From Anolis carolinensis (lineage: Eukaryota), in contig NC_085841.1 of assembly GCF_035594765.1 (NCBI RefSeq), forward strand, positions 47,351,636 to 47,415,635: 64,000 nt of DNA. Direction: 5' to 3'. Under the pieces are notes generated by a model, which had not been told where the DNA came from, did not search any database, and was given only the letters and a program-made list of their open reading frames with translations. Shown here one piece after another: positions 10,219 through 20,439 of this stretch. Within the stretch, counting starts at the first letter, position 1. Each line of letters begins with the position of its first letter. A program made the translations under genes and the position numbers.

Positions 10219-12823
10219 AGAAGGGAAGCGAGAGCAATGCAGAAGGCTTCTACTGAGCCGGTGGTGGTGGGGGGGGGGGGGCGCGTCTCAATGGCATTTT
10301 TAAAATGCTAGCAGATCGATGGCCATGCCTCTCCCTCCCTCCCTCTTCCGCTTTGATTGGCTGAGAGGCATGCCAACATGGCTTCTCCTCTCAGAGGGTC
10401 TACAGCTACATCCGAAGACATCAGAAACAAACGAAAAAAAGGTACTTTTATTATTCAAATTCGTAATATTTGTAAGGCAGTGAGCAGATGGTTCAATATC
10501 AATTCAAAAGTAATTATGAAACGAATTTTAAACTAATTTAGCGAACTAACGAAAAATTTGCTCAAGCCTAGTATTTATATGTGACTTCCATCTTAGCCTT
10601 TGCATTTCCAGTTCTTAAAAAAAAAAAGAATATCTTTATCAGGAATAGAGAAAACAAAAATATTGTCATTGGCATAAGATAAGTCAGTAATTCTTTACTT
10701 CTTCATTCTGAAGGCGTAAAAAAAAACCCACAAGAAAGATAGGGTGAGAAGCACAGAGAAATCAACCTTTGTCTTTTGGTTTAATGCTATTCATCTTCTT
10801 TTCCTTTCTTATTCCTCTACTTTGGACCAGTCCGTGTATTTTATCGGATTTCCTGTGTTTTTCTTTCGTAACAAGGTTAGTTTATCCATGTCTTTAATCT
10901 CTCTTACTTTCTGGATCCATTCTTCTATGTTTGGTATTTTCTTTTTGCTTCCACTGTTTTGCAAAACTAATTCTGGTGGCTGTGGTCAAATATGTGAACA
11001 AGATATCGTCGTTGGTGTCTAGGTGAATATCCAAATCAGTTATACCCAATAGGTAGTATTCCAGTTTCCTGGGAAATTTTATCTTAAGAATTTGTTGGCA
11101 TGCTGCATGGATTTTCTCCCAGATTTTTTTTTTGTTTCTTTACATGTCCACCACATGTGAAAGAAACTGCCCTCTTGATCCTCTGCATGTCTTACTTCTG
11201 AATTATCATCATTATAACAAGTTGGAAGGATATTTTGCTATAGAAATCTGTTTAAGGTAGGACCAGTAAGTGAGTAAGTGACCTCCCTTGCCAACAAGGG
11301 ACATTGTATCTAATGCCAACCAAGTGAATTTGGCACATGAGGCAAAAATCCTACAAGCAATTCTCCCTGGCAGTAAAACTATAATAACGAATTAAATAAT
11401 TTGCTGTCTCTTCATAATACCCAAAATCTCCTGCTTGCAGCAGTCACCACATTCTGCCTAATATTAGTGCTGGCTCTAATTTTTATGGGTTCATAAGAAT
11501 TCATGATCATCTCTCCCTGATGAAAAGATCACTATCTTTTATTGAAAAATACCTGCACACTTAATACATTAAATATCTTAAGGCAATTTTGTTTTGGTGT
11601 GAATTGTTTTAGCCCTCTGACAGCTTTGTTTATAAAAGGATAGGAGCCCAATTTCAAGCTCCCTCTGCTCTACCTCCTACACTGATGGGAAATTGGTCAT
11701 TTTGAGAAAGCTGTTCTGTCAGCTCATGCTTCCCCCCCAGCTGCTGATGTAAGCTAACTGCTCTTTTCCATGGCTGAATGCCATTTATAATAGAAATAAC
11801 TGCTTACTAATTAGCAGCTATATCTGTTAACTGCTTATTTGTTAGAGCATGAATTAGTAACCAGCCCTTTGTTGGGTTATAACTCTTCACAACTCTGGAA
11901 ATGATTCTTGTTCATATAGTAGATCAATACCTGCCAACCTACCCTTTACAAATACATTTCTCCCTCCCCTGGATATCGTATCTCCTTTACACCGCGCTTT
12001 CTGATTCCAGTGAGATGAAGCAGGGAGACGGATGGTGGTGACACCTCATAGCAGGTGGTCCATTGTGTACTATGATGTATTAATGGGTGTGATTGTTAAG
12101 GCAGTTACATTCTTTAATGACATAGTGCAATGCCTTTTAGAAAATTGCTGATAACTATATAACGCAGCTGCTGCTGCTATATGCATGCGACTAAGAAAAA
12201 GGCTATACAGCAATTATCCAATAAACAGCATGGAGTAAGGTCTTGCAGCAACTTGTACTCCAGCATGTCTTTTCATAGTTCTGTAAACTAAGATTTCATA
12301 TTCACAGAGAGATTATGGGAGATATAATTTCTTCTGTTGTTGCTATAACTCAAAAGGCAATGTGTTTTAATAGAGATCAGGAGACAGCCAATCAAGTCAG
12401 TAGCTGGCCTACAAAAACATTGTAATGTCTTCTTCTAAATGGATGACTGTGAGAATAAGACAAGGACTGTAACGTGTAGGAGACAGAGATGGGCAACTTC
12501 TAAGAGCATGATATCTGGGAGGCTAGCTCTCTCTGCTTCCAATTCCTCTGGTCCAAAATTGACCAACCGCATCTCTAGGTTCTGGGCAAGGGCAGGTATA
12601 GCCCTCCAGGGCTCTTACTTTTATAGATAGGGAGGTAGATAGACAAAAAGATAATATGCACATTTTTGCTGCCCAATGCCCCCTGGAGGACATGAGGGAA
12701 ATTTCACCATTTAAAACATTTTAAAAGTTGATTTACTTGTGTTGTCGAAGGCTTTCATGGTCGGGATTGCAGGGTTGTTGTATGTCTTTCGGGCTGTGTG
12801 GCCATGTTCCAGAAGTATTCTCT

Positions 12824-12864
12824 CCTGACGTTTCGCCCACATCTATGGCAGGCATCCTCAGAGG
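12824..12864 (-). ncRNA. Minimal type I hammerhead ribozyme motif (intact)
   Basis: Reverse strand reads cct-CTGAGGA-t-gcctgc-catagat-gtgggc-GAAAC-GTC-agg. Confidence 0.8.
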
Positions 12865-12884
12865 CTGTGAGGCATGAATCACAG

Positions 12885-12925
12885 CCTCTGAGGATGCCTG
12901 CCATAGATGTGGGCGAAACGTCAGG
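12885..12925 (+). ncRNA. Minimal type I hammerhead ribozyme motif (intact)
   Basis: CTGAGGA at 12888-12894, helix II gcctgc/gtgggc, GAAAC at 12915-12919, GTC at 12920-12922, helix I cct/agg. Confidence 0.8.
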
Positions 12926-13029
12926 AGAGAATACTTCTGGAACATGGCCACACAGCCCGAAAGACATACAACAACCCCTTGATTTACTTGCTCTTCCAGG
13001 CTGCTTATGGCAAAAGGAACCTTTGTATG

Positions 13030-15716: not shown

Positions 15717-15910
15717 AAATATAAGGCAAACTTTGAACCTCCAGGTGTTTTGGACTTCAACACCCACAATCCCTAACAGCCTCAGGCCCCTTCCTTTCCC
15801 CTCTCAGCAGCTTAAGCAGCTGAGGGGGGAAAGGAAGGGGTCTGAGGCTGTTAGGGATTGTGGGAGTTGAAGACCAAAACACCTGGAGGGCCAAAGTTTG
15901 CCCATGTGTG
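15717..15910. mobile_element. Fully palindromic hAT/Charlie-like MITE
   Basis: Imperfect ~95-bp arms centred on CTTAAG (15811-15816). Ends ggcaaacttt ... aaagtttgcccatg. Confidence 0.75.
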
Positions 15911-16409
15911 ATCTAAACCATCTTGGGAAAGTTCATTTTTGGTCTACAGTTTTTCAGATCTTCAGCCAGCATGGCCAGTGCTGTGGTTCTGGTGGTTGTG
16001 GGATTTGGAGAGTCGCAGTCCAGGAAATGAACTTTTTCAAGCTCACAAAGCAAATGAGCAGCCCAGAGTTCAGACACCGAGGACAATAAACCATGTAGGT
16101 CCCTCCCATGGAGACCTGGGCCACCTTGCTTCTTCTTCTGTGGGCTGGATGTGGTGATTCTCCAGAATTGCCTCCTCGACATTGGCCTCTGAAGGAAGAA
16201 CTAGCTGAAGCAAAAGAGAATAGGACAAAGCAGGTGCTTGACGTTTGCCTTTTCACCAGTAGCCAAGGATGAGAATGCAGGGGCTTGAAGACACACACCA
16301 ACAGTGCTGCAAAAGCGTGGCAAGACACGTGTGTGAATGCGTCCACACATGCAGGTGCAGAACCAGCCACAGTTCAGAACCAGCGTGGAAAACAGACCTG
16401 ACCTGTGTC

Positions 16410-17280
16410 TTCAAGGCCAAGAACAAGCCATGAGAGTAAAGACAAAGATTTACCCAGCGGAAAAGTGTTCTTACCATACATCAAGGGAACCACTGGTCAC
16501 ATAGGGAAGTTGATGAAGAAACACAACGTCTACAGTACCTACAGATCCATTAAGAAAATCCAACACATGCTATGTTCAGCAAAGGACAAGAGGGTCCCTC
16601 TCACCTCTGCAGGAGACTACCGTATACCATGCAGCTGCGTACTAGTCTATATAGGAACCAACAAAAGCAGCATTAACGAATCAAGGAACATGAAAGGCAC
16701 TGCAGACTAAATCAACTAAAGAAGTCAGCCATAGCAGAGCACTTGATGGACCAACCTGGACACAGCATATTATTTGAGAACACAGAAATGCTAACAACCA
16801 CCATATGGCAGACTACACAGATAAGCTACTGAAATCCACAAGCATGTGGACAATTTCAACAGAAAGGAGGAAACCATAAACATGAACAAAATCTGACTAC
16901 AAGTATTAAAAAATTAAAATCAGGGAAGTAAATAATGAACAATTAGAAAACAAAGGAATTGCAGGCATGAAGCAATCAGGGTCAGCCAACACCGCTCAAC
17001 AAAGGATTCCCCCACGCAGTAAGGAGCCACATCTTGAAGGTGAAAGGCTATTCAAAGCTAATCAAGGTGGCCAATTGCAACACCTGCCTCAAACAGACAG
17101 AGTTCTTTTTCCCACCCTGGACTTTTTGCAGATATATAAACTCCACTTGCCTAGTTTCCAACAGATTTCACAACCTCTGAAGATGCCTGCCATATATGCG
17201 GGCGAAACGTCGGGAGAGAATGCTCCTGGAATATGGACATACAGCCCGGAAAACTCGGAGTATCCCAGCGATTCCGGCCT
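16410..17280 (+). mobile_element. Penelope-like element 3' fragment: decayed GIY-YIG endonuclease plus pLTR
   Basis: ORF 16405-16710 has VFLPYIKG...GDYRIPCSCVLVYIGT (GIY...YIG motif), with frameshifts, followed by the pLTR. Confidence 0.9.
17174..17214 (+). ncRNA. Minimal type I hammerhead ribozyme motif (intact)
   Basis: CTGAAGA at 17177-17183, helix II gcctgc/gcgggc, GAAAC at 17204-17208, GTC at 17209-17211, helix I cct/ggg. Confidence 0.75.
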
Positions 17281-18638: not shown

Positions 18639-18705
18639 ATGGAGACTCTCTGGGTGTTGCTTCTCTCCCTGGTCCCGGCGTGCGCCAAGGGCCAAGGGGT
18701 CTACG
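18639..18705 (+). CDS. MDGA1: First coding exon (signal peptide) of MAM domain-containing GPI-anchor protein 1
   Basis: Strong Kozak aagATGG. METLWVLLLSLVPACAKGQGVY plus 1 nt, then donor G|GTAAGA (phase 1). GQGVY(A) is the hallmark mature N-terminus of MDGA1/2. The 22-residue length and ME...LLL.L.P...GQGVY pattern fit MDGA1 better than MDGA2. Confidence 0.88.
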
Positions 18706-19307
18706 GTAAGAGGGCCAAGGGAAGGGCTTGTTTTCCGGGGAAAGAGAGACAGAGAGACGGGAGGAAAGGGCGGGTCGGGGTTCAGCCACCATCGGATCGG
18801 ATCAAAGTTTCTTTTTCAAAGCACCTGCAGCGGGGATGGGCAGCGGACACGGGACCAGGACCGAGCTCTTCCTGCTCGGCTCGGCTCTCTGTCCCTCCAC
18901 ACAAGGGTCCCCGAGAGCCAGCCTTGTAACCCTTTCCTCCCCTTGGCTCGGAGTCCTCCTCCCTCGCTCGCTTTCCCTGGGAGCAGCGGGTGCTTCGGGG
19001 CTCAGCTGCGGGCGAATAAATCAACCGGTTGTTTGCTTGGCGCGTGTGTGTGTGTTTGGGCGGCGGAGGGAGGGCGAGAGCTGCCTGGGAAAGTCCGCGG
19101 GAGGCAGGCGGCGCGTTTCCTCTCGGCTTCGCTTCTCGTTGAGCTTTGGGCCCCGTCCCCACTCCTCGAAACGGCGCTCAGTGGGCAGCGCGGACTTCTG
19201 TCAAGGTTTCTCGGTGTGTTGGCCAAGGCTTTCATGGCCGGAATCGCTGGGCTGCTGCGAGTATTCCCGGCTGTATGTTCCAGAAAAAAAAACATTCGCT
19301 CCTAACG

Positions 19308-19443
19308 CAGTGGGGTCTCAACTTGGGGTCCCCAGATGTTTTTGGCCTCCAGCTCTCCGAATTCCTAACAGCTGGTAAACTGGCTGGAATTTCTGGGAGT
19401 CGTAGGCCAAAATATCTGGGGACCCACAGGTTGAGAACCACTG
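19308..19443. mobile_element. hAT/Charlie (SPIN-like termini) palindromic MITE
   Basis: CAGTGG..CTCAAC ... GTTGAGAACCACTG. Degenerate TSD cctaacg/cctggcg. Confidence 0.85.
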
Positions 19444-19566
19444 CCTGGCGTTTCGCCCCTATCTATGGCAGGCATCCTCAGAGGTTGAGAGATCTGTTGT
19501 TGGAAGCTAGGCAAGTGGGGTTTACATATCTGTTGAAGGTCCAGGTGGGAGAAAGAACTCTTGTCA

Positions 19567-19715
19567 GGGCCCTTCCACGCAGCCCTATATCCCAGAATAT
19601 CAAGGCAGAAAATCCCACAATGTCTACTTTGAACTGGGTTACGTGAGTCCACACTCAGATAATGTGGGATTTTCTGTCTTGATATTCTGGGATATAGGGC
19701 TGTGTGGAAGGGCCC
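19567..19715. mobile_element. Harbinger-like palindromic MITE
   Basis: TIR GGGCCCTTCCAC ... GTGGAAGGGCCC with long inverted arms. Related pieces at ~39660-39730 and ~59360-59518. Confidence 0.75.
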
Positions 19716-20439
19716 TAGGTTAATGTTGCAATTAATCGTCTTATTAGTATTGAAAAGCCTACCAGCTTCAAAGCCTGAGTGTTTCCTGCTTAGGGGAATC
19801 CTTTGTTGGGAGGTGTTAGCTGATAGAGGTGATGGTTTCATGTCTGGAATCCCTGTTTCCAGAGTGTTGCTCGTTATTCACTGTCCTGATTTTAGAGGTT
19901 GATGGACCAACCTGGACACAGCATATTATTTGAGAACACAGAAATGCTGGACCACTCTAGCAACCACCATGTCGGACTACACAGAGAAGCCAATGAAATC
20001 CACAAGCATGTGGACAATTTCAACAGAAAGGAGGAAACCATGAACATGAACAAAATCTGGCTACCAGTATTTTAAAAAACCCCTCTATAATCAGGACAGT
20101 AAATAAAGAACAATGCTATGAAAACGGGAATTCCAGGCAGGAAACAATCAGGGTCAGCAAACACCTCCCAACGAAGGATTCCCCCTGGCAGGGAGCATCC
20201 AGATTTTGAAACTGCAAGGCTCTTTAATGCTAACCAAGATGATTAATTGCAACATTAACAGACAAGAGTTATTTTTTCCCACCCTGGACTTTCCACAGAT
20301 ACATAAACCTCACTTGCTTAGTTTCCAACAGACCTTACAACCTCTGATAATGCCTGCCATAGATGTGGATGAAAGTTCAGGAGAAAATGCTTCAGGAACA
20401 TGGCTATACAGCCCGGAAAACTGACAGCAACCCAATGCT

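What the first reader, a model, noticed from the sequence alone, without database searches (positions are those of the whole stretch)
12728..12990. A ~240-bp non-coding palindromic retroelement with an intact hammerhead ribozyme on each strand
Seen: two 99-bp arms with zero mismatches, an 8-nt loop, unmutated CpGs and a 10-12-bp TSD. Each arm holds CUGAGGA / helix II / GAAAC-GUC with a palindromic ACGU in place of helix III. Established: Penelope-like elements carry such minimal hammerheads, proposed to cleave as dimers, and often integrate with an inverted 5' segment. Inference: a very recent insertion reduced to little more than the ribozyme. A transcript from either strand must fold either as a ribozyme or as a 99-bp dsRNA (Dicer/ADAR substrate, possible siRNA source against the family). 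If it recurs with the same loop, it would be a non-autonomous retrozyme/MITE-like family of its own.
Basis: partly seen in the sequence, partly recalled or inferred. Interest (0 to 1): 0.8.

Follow-up and report, generated by a model that had tools for sequence, protein, structure and literature searches.

The report
Young head-to-head Poseidon retrotransposon mini-insertion
The perfect 99-bp palindrome is real, but it is an ordinary, young and dead-end insertion of the published green-anole Penelope-like retrotransposon Poseidon_Ac, carrying that element's standard hammerhead motif in an inverted-pair layout already described for this class.

Summary
There are two 99-nt arms (12772-12870 and 12879-12977) that are 100% complementary, an 8-nt spacer and an exact 12-bp target-site duplication. 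A complete minimal hammerhead motif lies in the sense arm of each strand.

The element is nt -23..+116 of Poseidon_Ac, counted from its ATG, with sense on the minus strand. Abutting it is an inverted copy of nt -15..+84. It differs from the published consensus at 7 of 139 positions.

- **Outer ends.** They fall at +84/85 and +116-118. These are the two internal reverse-transcription start sites mapped in vitro for this element. The 32-bp one-sided extension (12740-12771) is the published "tail".
- **The "loop".** It is probably not filler. It matches Poseidon_Ac -23..-16 at 6 of 8 positions.
- **A second pair.** An older head-to-head Poseidon pair in this window (19213-20433) has the same outer ends but a different inner junction.
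- **Ribozyme.** A transcript of either strand folds into the hairpin at about -215 to -222 kcal/mol. The hammerhead-like fold is worth about -9 kcal/mol. The two motifs are never on one RNA, so the dimer route is closed in cis.
- **Further mobility.** The copy lacks the TATA box and ORF nt 117-172, which the element's enzyme needs in vitro. It is most likely a dead end, not a family of its own.

The scan has already noted similar Penelope palindromes elsewhere in this genome. Interest is low.

The parts
12728..12739 (.). Left copy of the target-site duplication, TTGATTTACTTG
   Evidence: Exact 12-nt direct repeat flanking the insert. The target is AT-rich: flanks are 67% A+T and the TSD contains ATT.
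12740..12771 (-). The 'tail': Poseidon_Ac ORF nt +85..+116, present at this end only
   Evidence: Lies outside the palindrome. Matches consensus nt 85-116 with 3 transitions (compared by eye). The published tail spans about nt 85-119, between the two RT start sites.
12740..12878 (-). Long arm: Poseidon_Ac nt -23..+116, sense on the minus strand
   Evidence: Compared by eye with the consensus: 132 of 139 positions identical. The 28-mer -23..+5 hits only the minus strand at 12851-12878, with 3 mismatches.
12871..12878 (-). The 8-nt spacer of the palindrome, read as element nt -23..-16 of the long arm
   Evidence: TTCATGCC against consensus TCCATACC: 6 of 8 match and both differences are transitions. 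Chance of 6 or more matches out of 8 is about 0.004 per orientation (my calculation).
12879..12977 (+). Short inverted arm: Poseidon_Ac nt -15..+84, sense on the plus strand
   Evidence: 100% complementary to 12772-12870. It ends at the tail boundary, about +85.
12978..12978 (+). One extra C between the short arm and the TSD, either untemplated or a source variant
   Evidence: The consensus has T at +85. This base is not part of the palindrome.
12885..12937 (+). Minimal hammerhead motif (element nt -9..+44): core CTGAGGA 12888-12894, helix II 12896-12914, GAAACGTC 12915-12922
   Evidence: Read directly from the sequence. Matches the published features. Helix II pairs have probability 0.91-0.97; stem I has probability below 0.01.
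12812..12864 (-). Mirror hammerhead motif on the minus strand: CTGAGGA 12861->12855, GAAACGTC 12834->12827
   Evidence: The arms are identical.
12733..12855 (-). Stub of the element's ORF: 40 codons plus a stop in the flank
   Evidence: The translation matches the first 39 residues of Poseidon_Ac_1p at 36 of 39 positions.
12979..12990 (.). Right copy of the target-site duplication
19213..20433 (.). Second, older head-to-head Poseidon-type pair in the window, used as a comparison. The minus copy runs about 19213-19898 and ends at +118 with a tail. The plus copy runs about 19905-20433 and ends at +85/86 without a tail.

Best explanation
This is a young, non-autonomous, dead-end insertion of the green-anole Penelope-like retrotransposon Poseidon_Ac (PAc). 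It consists only of the pLTR/ORF junction piece in the class's known head-to-head layout.

Shown:
- The insert is PAc nt -23..+116 (sense on the minus strand) abutting an inverted PAc nt -15..+84.
- It is flanked by a 12-bp duplication of an AT-rich target.
- Its two outer ends coincide with the two internal RT start sites published for PAc.
- The one-sided 32 bp is the published 'tail'.
- Each sense arm carries the family's standard minimal hammerhead. This motif has been shown for the consensus to cleave only when PAc protein is present, and not to be needed for insertion.

Inferred mechanism, about 55% likely given the identity above:
1. The PAc enzyme cut both target strands 12 bp apart, as it does in vitro.
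2. Each 3' end primed reverse transcription of junction RNA, one from about +116-118 and the other from about +85.
3. Both cDNAs stopped close to the predicted pLTR transcription start. The TATA box lies at -51 and an Inr-like TCACA at -15.
4. One cDNA then jumped end-to-end onto the other, which supplied the second strand and created the palindrome.

Consequences, also inferred:
- Any RNA through the locus folds into a 99-bp hairpin that buries the ribozyme.
- No RNA carries two sense hammerheads.
- The copy lacks the promoter and ORF nt 117-172, so it cannot be copied again.
For: - **Palindrome and TSD:**
- **Identity to the Poseidon_Ac consensus (File S1 of PMC11167929):** 4 differences in +1..+116, 1 in -15..-1 and 2 in -23..-16, all transitions, compared by eye. 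The junction 28-mer matches the minus strand only. The ORF stub matches at 36 of 39 residues.
- **PAc landmarks that fit (PMC11167929):**
  - The ORF starts at stem II.
  - The cut site is 26 nt after the start codon. Here ATG is at 12894-12896 and the cut follows 12922.
  - The core lies at -6..+1.
  - RT starts in an AC-rich stem-loop at 111-118.
  - The tail spans about 85-119, between the two start sites.
  - Both strands are cut and extended.
  - The hammerhead is active only with protein.
  - No RNA-seq reads end at the cut site.
  - The RNA needs the first 172 nt of the ORF.
- **Known architecture (inverted 5'-truncated copy plus a 30-40-bp tail at one end):** PMC8557442 and PMC3846280.
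- **In-window replicate:** the pair at 19213-20433 has outer ends at +118 and +85/86 but a different inner junction.
- **Abundance:** seven junction copies in 64 kb.
- **Folding:** the hairpin is -221.5 and -214.6 kcal/mol. The hammerhead-like fold is -8.8 against an MFE of -14.4, with stem I probability below 0.01.
Against: - The consensus could only be compared by eye.
- Genome-wide recurrence of this exact junction was not testable. The metagenome collection holds no anole DNA.
- The transcription start of PAc is not mapped. The idea that the cDNAs ran off at the RNA 5' end rests on TATA spacing alone. The older pair has inner ends far upstream, so run-off at the start site is not general.
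- The extra C at 12978 and the 2 mismatches in the 8-nt spacer are unexplained.
- Nick positions do not sit exactly on an ATT.
- Perfect arm identity could also be kept by gene conversion within the palindrome, so 'young' is an upper-bound argument: below about 7-27 My for 0.5-2e-9 substitutions per site per year (assumed rates).
Confidence: 0.82

Rival explanations
1. Same element, different origin of the palindrome. A single cDNA was primed at +116-118 and ran to about -23. It then snapped back on itself with an 8-nt loop and copied itself out to +84 before joining the other target end. This is the self-priming proposed for Penelope inverted repeats.
For: Arkhipova et al. 2013 interpret palindromes at inverted PLE junctions as self-priming. 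The arms are identical, and the spacer is the continuation of the long arm. This is what a fold-back gives without needing a second RNA.
Against: A fold-back gives no reason for the second arm to stop exactly at the tail boundary (+84/85). The older pair in this window also ends at +85/86. The chance of landing within 1 nt of that site is about 2% per pair. The 3' end of the loop (AA) has no complementary bases to prime from.
Confidence: 0.3
2. One reading: the 239-bp palindrome is itself the unit of a non-autonomous, retrozyme- or MITE-like family that is copied as a whole.
For: Earlier unchecked notes of this scan list several Penelope palindromes of 200-260 bp in this genome, including one headed as a family of ~250-bp head-to-head mini-elements. 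Non-LTR retrozymes are reported to derive from PLE pLTRs.
Against: - There is no tandem repeat.
- The copy has no TATA box and lacks ORF nt 117-172, which PAc RT needs in vitro.
- An RNA of the whole unit would be a 99-bp hairpin, a poor RT template.
- The spacer is element sequence, so independent events could share it.
- The other pair in the window has a different junction.
- Palindromes with other arm lengths (94 and 553 bp) are also noted in the genome.
Confidence: 0.05
3. Assembly or library artefact: a fold-back chimera with no counterpart in the animal.
For: Perfect palindromes are a known product of chimeric reads, and PLE inverted structures are known to trouble assemblies.
Against: The palindrome is bounded by an exact 12-bp TSD. 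It has the biologically expected asymmetry, with a 32-bp tail at one end only, and its ends fall at the two published RT start sites. An artefact would not reproduce these features.
Confidence: 0.03
4. Exapted function: the locus is transcribed and serves as a hairpin-RNA source of small RNAs against Poseidon_Ac, or as a working ribozyme.
For: A perfect 99-bp hairpin would be a good Dicer or ADAR substrate. The Rfam model of a Nematostella miRNA that arose from an inverted duplication resembles these arms in sequence.
Against: There is no promoter in the insert. It lies about 5.7 kb upstream of MDGA1 exon 1, outside that transcript. There is no evidence of transcription, and too little time has passed for conservation to be tested. 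The ribozyme fold is not competitive, and only one sense motif is present per RNA.
Confidence: 0.05

Closest known systems
Poseidon_Ac (PAc), Penelope/Poseidon-clade PLE of Anolis carolinensis (Arkhipova 2006; Frangieh et al. 2024, PMC11167929)
   Same: About 95% identical over -23..+116. It has the same hammerhead, the same ATG inside stem II, the same cut position, the same two 3' boundaries and tail, and an AT-rich target.
   Different: Only 139 + 99 nt of a 2.7-kb unit are present. There is no RT/EN ORF and no TATA box. Seven transitions separate it from the consensus, so the source was a slightly diverged subfamily.
Head-to-head inverted pLTR insertions of PLEs (Pen2a_Av of Adineta vaga, PMC3846280; general scheme in Craig et al. 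2021, PMC8557442)
   Same: An inverted 5'-truncated copy abuts the direct copy. The inverted copy is shorter. There is a 30-40-bp tail at one end only and a TSD of about 8-12 bp.
   Different: Here there is no element body between the inverted pieces, so the whole insert is the inverted pair.
Metazoan PLE minimal hammerhead (Cervera and De la Pena 2014, PMC4209133; dimer cleavage, Lunse et al. 2016, cited in PMC6765202)
   Same: It has the CUGANGA and GAAA boxes, an extra base between positions 9 and 10.1, the G10.1-C11.1 pair, a 6-bp helix II, a short helix I and the palindromic ACGU instead of helix III.
   Different: The two motifs lie on opposite strands, so they cannot dimerise in cis. 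Stem I is only 3 bp in this truncated copy.
L1 twin-priming inversions
   Same: Both target 3' ends are used as primers, which gives a 5' inverted segment within one TSD-flanked insertion.
   Different: In L1 the two cDNAs copy different parts of one RNA. Here both copy the same part and start at element-specific internal sites.
Animal non-LTR retrozymes (PMC7229834; bioRxiv 10.64898/2026.07.22.740005)
   Same: They are short, non-coding, hammerhead-bearing and derived from PLE pLTRs.
   Different: Retrozymes are head-to-tail tandem repeats that yield circular RNAs. This insert is inverted, not tandem.

Membership tests
Poseidon_Ac / EN+ Penelope-like element insertion | Sequence match to the family consensus at the pLTR-ORF junction | tested here: met
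   132 of 139 positions identical to File S1 of PMC11167929 (compared by eye). The 28-mer -23..+5 is found with 3 mismatches. The ORF stub matches at 36 of 39 residues.
Poseidon_Ac / EN+ Penelope-like element insertion | 3' boundaries at the internal RT start sites, with a 30-40-bp tail at one end only | tested here: met
   The ends are at +84/85 and +116-118, and the tail is 12740-12771, 32 bp.
Poseidon_Ac / EN+ Penelope-like element insertion | Short TSD in an AT-rich target | tested here: met
   Exact 12-bp TSD. Flanks are 67% A+T and the TSD contains ATT.
Poseidon_Ac / EN+ Penelope-like element insertion | Adjacent inverted 5'-truncated copy | tested here: met
Poseidon_Ac / EN+ Penelope-like element insertion | RT plus GIY-YIG endonuclease ORF (autonomy) | tested here: not met
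   Only the first 39 codons are present. This is a fragment of the family, not an autonomous member.
Metazoan PLE minimal hammerhead | Core boxes C3-A9 and G12-A14, then A15.1...U16.1 H17 | tested here: met
   CUGAGGA ... GAA-ACGU-C is read directly from the sequence. The positions agree with the PAc core at -6..+1 and the cut after +29.
Metazoan PLE minimal hammerhead | Unpaired base between 9 and 10.1, the G10.1-C11.1 pair, and palindromic 15.2-16.2 | tested here: met
   There is a U after A9. The GCCUGC/GUGGGC helix opens with G-C. C15.2-G16.2 lies within ACGU.
Metazoan PLE minimal hammerhead | Helix II of 6-8 bp and helix I of 4-5 bp | tested here: inconclusive
   Helix II has 6 bp with pair probability 0.91-0.97. 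Helix I has only 3 bp (CCU/AGG) with probability below 0.01.
Metazoan PLE minimal hammerhead | Self-cleavage | not testable with these tools
   Published for the PAc consensus only in the presence of PAc protein. Single motifs of other PLEs are inactive.
Rfam hammerhead families | Covariance-model score at or above the gathering threshold | tested here: not met
   No hit in the window at gathering threshold, and none at E<=10 on a single arm. This is expected for a motif without helix III.
Non-LTR retrozyme | Head-to-tail tandem repeats, each with a hammerhead | tested here: not met
   The only direct repeat is the TSD, and the copies are inverted.
MITE | Symmetric terminal inverted repeats of a DNA transposon, with a TSD of that superfamily | tested here: not met
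   The termini are asymmetric, with 32 extra bases at one end. The sequence is that of a retroelement ending at RT start sites.
miRNA precursor mir-2041 (RF03760) | Score at or above the gathering threshold of 70 bits | tested here: not met
   62.1 bits.

The most novel reading that the evidence does not exclude
Such mini-palindromes may be natural footprints of a symmetric reaction. A dimeric PAc particle would prime reverse transcription on both target strands, one from each of its two internal start sites. Both cDNAs would run off at the still unmapped pLTR transcription start (about -15 to -23) and be joined by an end-to-end template jump. As a class, these hairpin loci might also feed small-RNA silencing of active Poseidon copies.
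Probability: 0.15. Interest if true: 0.5.

Novelty: already known. Interest (0 to 1): 0.18.

Why it matters
For annotation it matters little. It is one more Poseidon_Ac fragment in a genome full of them, and it lies outside the MDGA1 transcript. Its modest value is as a clean natural specimen. It is undecayed and shows, in one TSD-flanked insert, both published RT start sites, the one-sided tail and a junction without filler. A genome-wide tally of such pairs could test in vivo the both-strand priming that has so far been seen only in vitro for this element.

Tried and rejected
- **Rfam.** There was no hammerhead hit at gathering threshold in the window or at E<=10 on one arm. The miRNA hits on the full hairpin are all below threshold and mostly reflect the perfect stem.
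- **Recurrence of the junction.** A pattern for head-to-head junctions found nothing in metagenome contigs. A control 22-mer of the abundant family hammerhead also found nothing. That collection therefore holds no anole DNA, and the blank means nothing.
- **The look-up of encoding contigs with the 40-aa ORF stub.** Not on record.
- **Pfam on the decayed endonuclease fragment at 16405-16707.** No family. Its match to the PAc protein is by eye only.
- **A shared 5' end.** I considered that the 41-kb copy starts at the same base (-15), which would indicate a fixed RNA 5' end. I rejected this because its upstream sequence aligns weakly to the pLTR and it runs past +118.
- **Mutual priming through CATG.** I considered that two cDNAs primed each other through the self-complementary CATG in the spacer. 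I rejected this because it predicts CC where the sequence has AA.
- **Computed alignment to the consensus.** This step was left out. The consensus exists only as text in a paper supplement and has no reference, so I compared it by eye and typed only one 28-mer.
- **The large protein searches.** Not used, because no claim here depends on them.
Full report
**1. Observation**

- The repeat finder reports arms 12772-12870 and 12879-12977. They are 99 nt, 100% complementary and separated by 8 nt.
- It also reports an exact 12-nt direct repeat, TTGATTTACTTG, at 12728-12739 and 12979-12990.
- The insert is 12740-12978, 239 bp.
- Two details were not in the finding. The left side carries 32 bases (12740-12771) that are not part of the palindrome. 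A single C (12978) sits between the right arm and the TSD.

**2. What it is**

Other copies of the same repeat lie in the window near 9.6, 17.2, 19.2-19.5, 20.3 and 41.2 kb. It is therefore a member of an abundant family.

The literature search led to Frangieh et al. 2024 (PMC11167929). Their supplement holds the Repbase consensus of Poseidon_Ac (PAc), a Penelope-like element of Anolis carolinensis. I compared it by eye with the sense arm printed.
- The minus strand from 12878 to 12740 is PAc nt -23..+116, counted from the A of the start codon.
- The plus strand from 12879 to 12977 is PAc nt -15..+84.
- There are seven differences: -22, -18, -10, +40, +87, +88 and +95. All are transitions.
- The two differences inside the repeated part (-10 and +40) are present in both arms, so they predate the insertion.
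- A 28-mer of the consensus (-23..+5) matches with 3 mismatches on the minus strand only, at 12851-12878.
- The ORF stub translates to 40 residues, and 36 of the first 39 equal the PAc protein.

Earlier unchecked notes of this scan call the genome green anole. Earlier follow-ups reached the same family at other loci. The consensus match here agrees with them.

**3. Anatomy against the published biology of this element**

Frangieh et al. report the following:
- The PAc ORF begins at hammerhead stem II.
- The cut site lies 26 nt after the start codon.
- The catalytic core is nt -6..+1.
- Reverse transcription starts at two internal sites in an AC-rich stem-loop.
- The optional genomic "tail" of about 34 nt (roughly nt 85-119) is the sequence between those two sites.
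- The enzyme cuts and extends both target strands.

The insert fits each landmark:
- ATG is at 12894-12896, and GAAACGTC ends at 12922, which is 26 nt after the ATG.
- The long arm ends at +116. This could be read as +118, because the first two flank bases also match the consensus. That is why the TSD can be read as 10-12 bp.
- The short arm ends at +84/85.
- The one-sided 32 bp at 12740-12771 is therefore the tail.

Craig et al. [quoted passage not shown] Arkhipova et al. 2013 show the same layout for Pen2a_Av, with a 9-bp TSD and a 31-bp tail. The layout is thus a published hallmark of the class. The only unusual point here is that nothing lies between the inverted pieces.

**4. The "loop"**

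On the sense (minus) strand the spacer reads TTCATGCC. The consensus upstream of -15 reads TCCATACC. Six of eight positions match and both differences are transitions. I calculate the chance of six or more matches at about 0.004 per orientation.

The spacer is therefore best read as eight further element bases belonging to the long arm, not as filler.

The older pair in this window behaves the same way. The 183 nt between its matching arms is element sequence of the longer arm.

**5. An in-window replicate**

A minus-strand copy at about 19213-19898 and a plus-strand copy at about 19905-20433 form a second head-to-head Poseidon-type pair. The arms are 78-82% alike, and the minus copy is interrupted by later insertions.
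- Its outer ends are at +118 (with tail) and +85/86 (without tail).
- Its inner junction lies hundreds of bases upstream, in the 3' part of the ORF.
- I found no TSD for it.

Two of two pairs thus end at the same two positions, while their junctions differ.

**6. How the palindrome most likely arose (inference)**

Each outer end is a known RT start site. A fold-back of a single cDNA gives no reason for the second arm to stop at +84/85, and the chance of that is about 2% per pair.

I therefore favour priming on both target strands, which matches the in vitro behaviour. One cDNA would then jump end-to-end onto the other, supplying the second strand without filler. I give this about 55%.

The self-priming model proposed by Arkhipova et al. 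2013 remains a live rival at about 30%.

The inner ends (-23 and -15) lie where a TATA-directed start would be expected. The TATA box begins at -51 and an Inr-like TCACA at -15. A similar TATA plus Inr-like pair is described for the rotifer pLTR. The cDNAs may therefore have run to the 5' end of a pLTR-initiated RNA. This point is weak: the start site is unmapped, and the older pair shows that such run-off is not general.

**7. The ribozyme claim**

The motif meets the sequence features that Cervera and De la Pena list for metazoan PLE minimal hammerheads:
- both core boxes;
- a base between positions 9 and 10.1 (U here);
- the G10.1-C11.1 pair;
- the palindromic 15.2-16.2 pair;
- a 6-bp helix II.

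Within -9..+44 it differs from the PAc consensus only at +40. Helix I has only 3 bp.

In the isolated -15..+44 RNA, helix II is predicted with probability 0.91-0.97 and helix I with probability below 0.01. The hammerhead-like structure scores -8.8 kcal/mol against an MFE of -14.4. Rfam models do not detect it, as expected without helix III.

The published data say that single PLE motifs are inactive and dimers are weak. The PAc motif cleaves only with PAc protein, it is dispensable for insertion, and no RNA-seq reads end at its cut site.

In this locus the odds are worse, for three reasons:
- A transcript of either strand folds into the 99-bp hairpin at -221.5 or -214.6 kcal/mol.
- The antisense arm is always made first.
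- Each RNA holds one sense and one antisense motif, so no cis dimer is possible.

**8. A family of its own?**

- The insert has no tandem repeat.
- It lacks the TATA box, which lies upstream of -23.
- It lacks ORF nt 117-172. The in vitro work found the first 172 nt of the ORF to be required in the RNA template.
- Because the spacer is element sequence, a recurring "same loop" could arise from independent events.
- Earlier notes of this scan list several Penelope palindromes at other places in this genome, with arm lengths from about 94 to 553 bp. These are unchecked leads. They fit repeated independent formation better than a single propagating unit.
- I could not search the anole genome. The two metagenome scans were blank, and the control shows that the blank is uninformative.

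**9. Context and age**

MDGA1 exon 1 reads METLWVLLLSLVPACAKGQGVY and is followed by a GTAAGA donor. It lies at 18639-18705 on the plus strand. The palindrome is therefore about 5.7 kb upstream of that exon and outside that transcript.

There are no differences in 99 paired sites plus 12 TSD sites. This gives a 95% upper bound of roughly 7-27 My for assumed rates of 2e-9 to 0.5e-9 per site per year. Gene conversion within the palindrome could make the arms look younger, but the perfect TSD argues against great age.

**10. Verdict**

The thing itself is an ordinary copy of a published element in a published layout. Interest is low.

Noticed in passing
window 12806-12943 (Rfam RF03760): The Rfam model of mir-2041 scores 62 bits here, below its threshold of 70. 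Mir-2041 is a Nematostella miRNA said to derive from an inverted duplication of a coding gene (PMC7713132). The match includes real sequence similarity, about 21 of 32 arm positions, around GAAACGU..AG..AAUAC..CUGG. That miRNA may itself come from a head-to-head Penelope-like junction.
   Followed up: partly
window 19213-20433: An older head-to-head Poseidon-type pair lies just downstream of MDGA1 exon 1. Its outer ends are at +118 (with tail) and +85/86 (no tail), it has later insertions in one arm, and no TSD is recognisable.
   Followed up: partly
window 16405-17279 (+): A decayed 5'-truncated Poseidon copy abuts the MDGA1 CpG island. It comprises an endonuclease-domain ORF fragment, the pLTR with TATATAAA at about 17133, a hammerhead motif and an end near +98. 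Pfam gave no hit on the fragment, and its similarity to the PAc protein is by eye.
   Followed up: partly
window 18639-18705 (+): A signal-peptide exon (METLWVLLLSLVPACAKGQGVY) with a GTAAGA donor at 18706, inside a GC-rich island spanning 16-20 kb. This is probably MDGA1 exon 1.
   Followed up: partly
window 15725-15902: An unrelated palindromic element with 89-nt arms, 92% complementary, and no spacer. It looks like a MITE and is not Penelope-derived.
   Followed up: no
window 19566-19716 and 40993-41129: Two short palindromic elements, each with 60-nt arms (93% and 90% complementary within each element). The first lies inside the 19k Poseidon copy and the second beside the 41k copy. A repeat beginning ACAGTGGTTCTCAACCTGTGGG, as in the arm of the second element, also interrupts the 19k copy at about 19300-19444. 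The arms of the two elements differ in sequence, so they were not shown to belong to one family.
   Followed up: no
window 12740-12878: All seven differences from the Poseidon_Ac consensus are transitions. Five of them lie in the 40 single-copy bases (tail and spacer) and two in the 99 duplicated bases (one-sided hypergeometric p of about 0.02, or 0.09 without the spacer). Possible causes are subfamily variation in the tail, error-prone synthesis at the start and end of the cDNA, or conversion between the arms.
   Followed up: no
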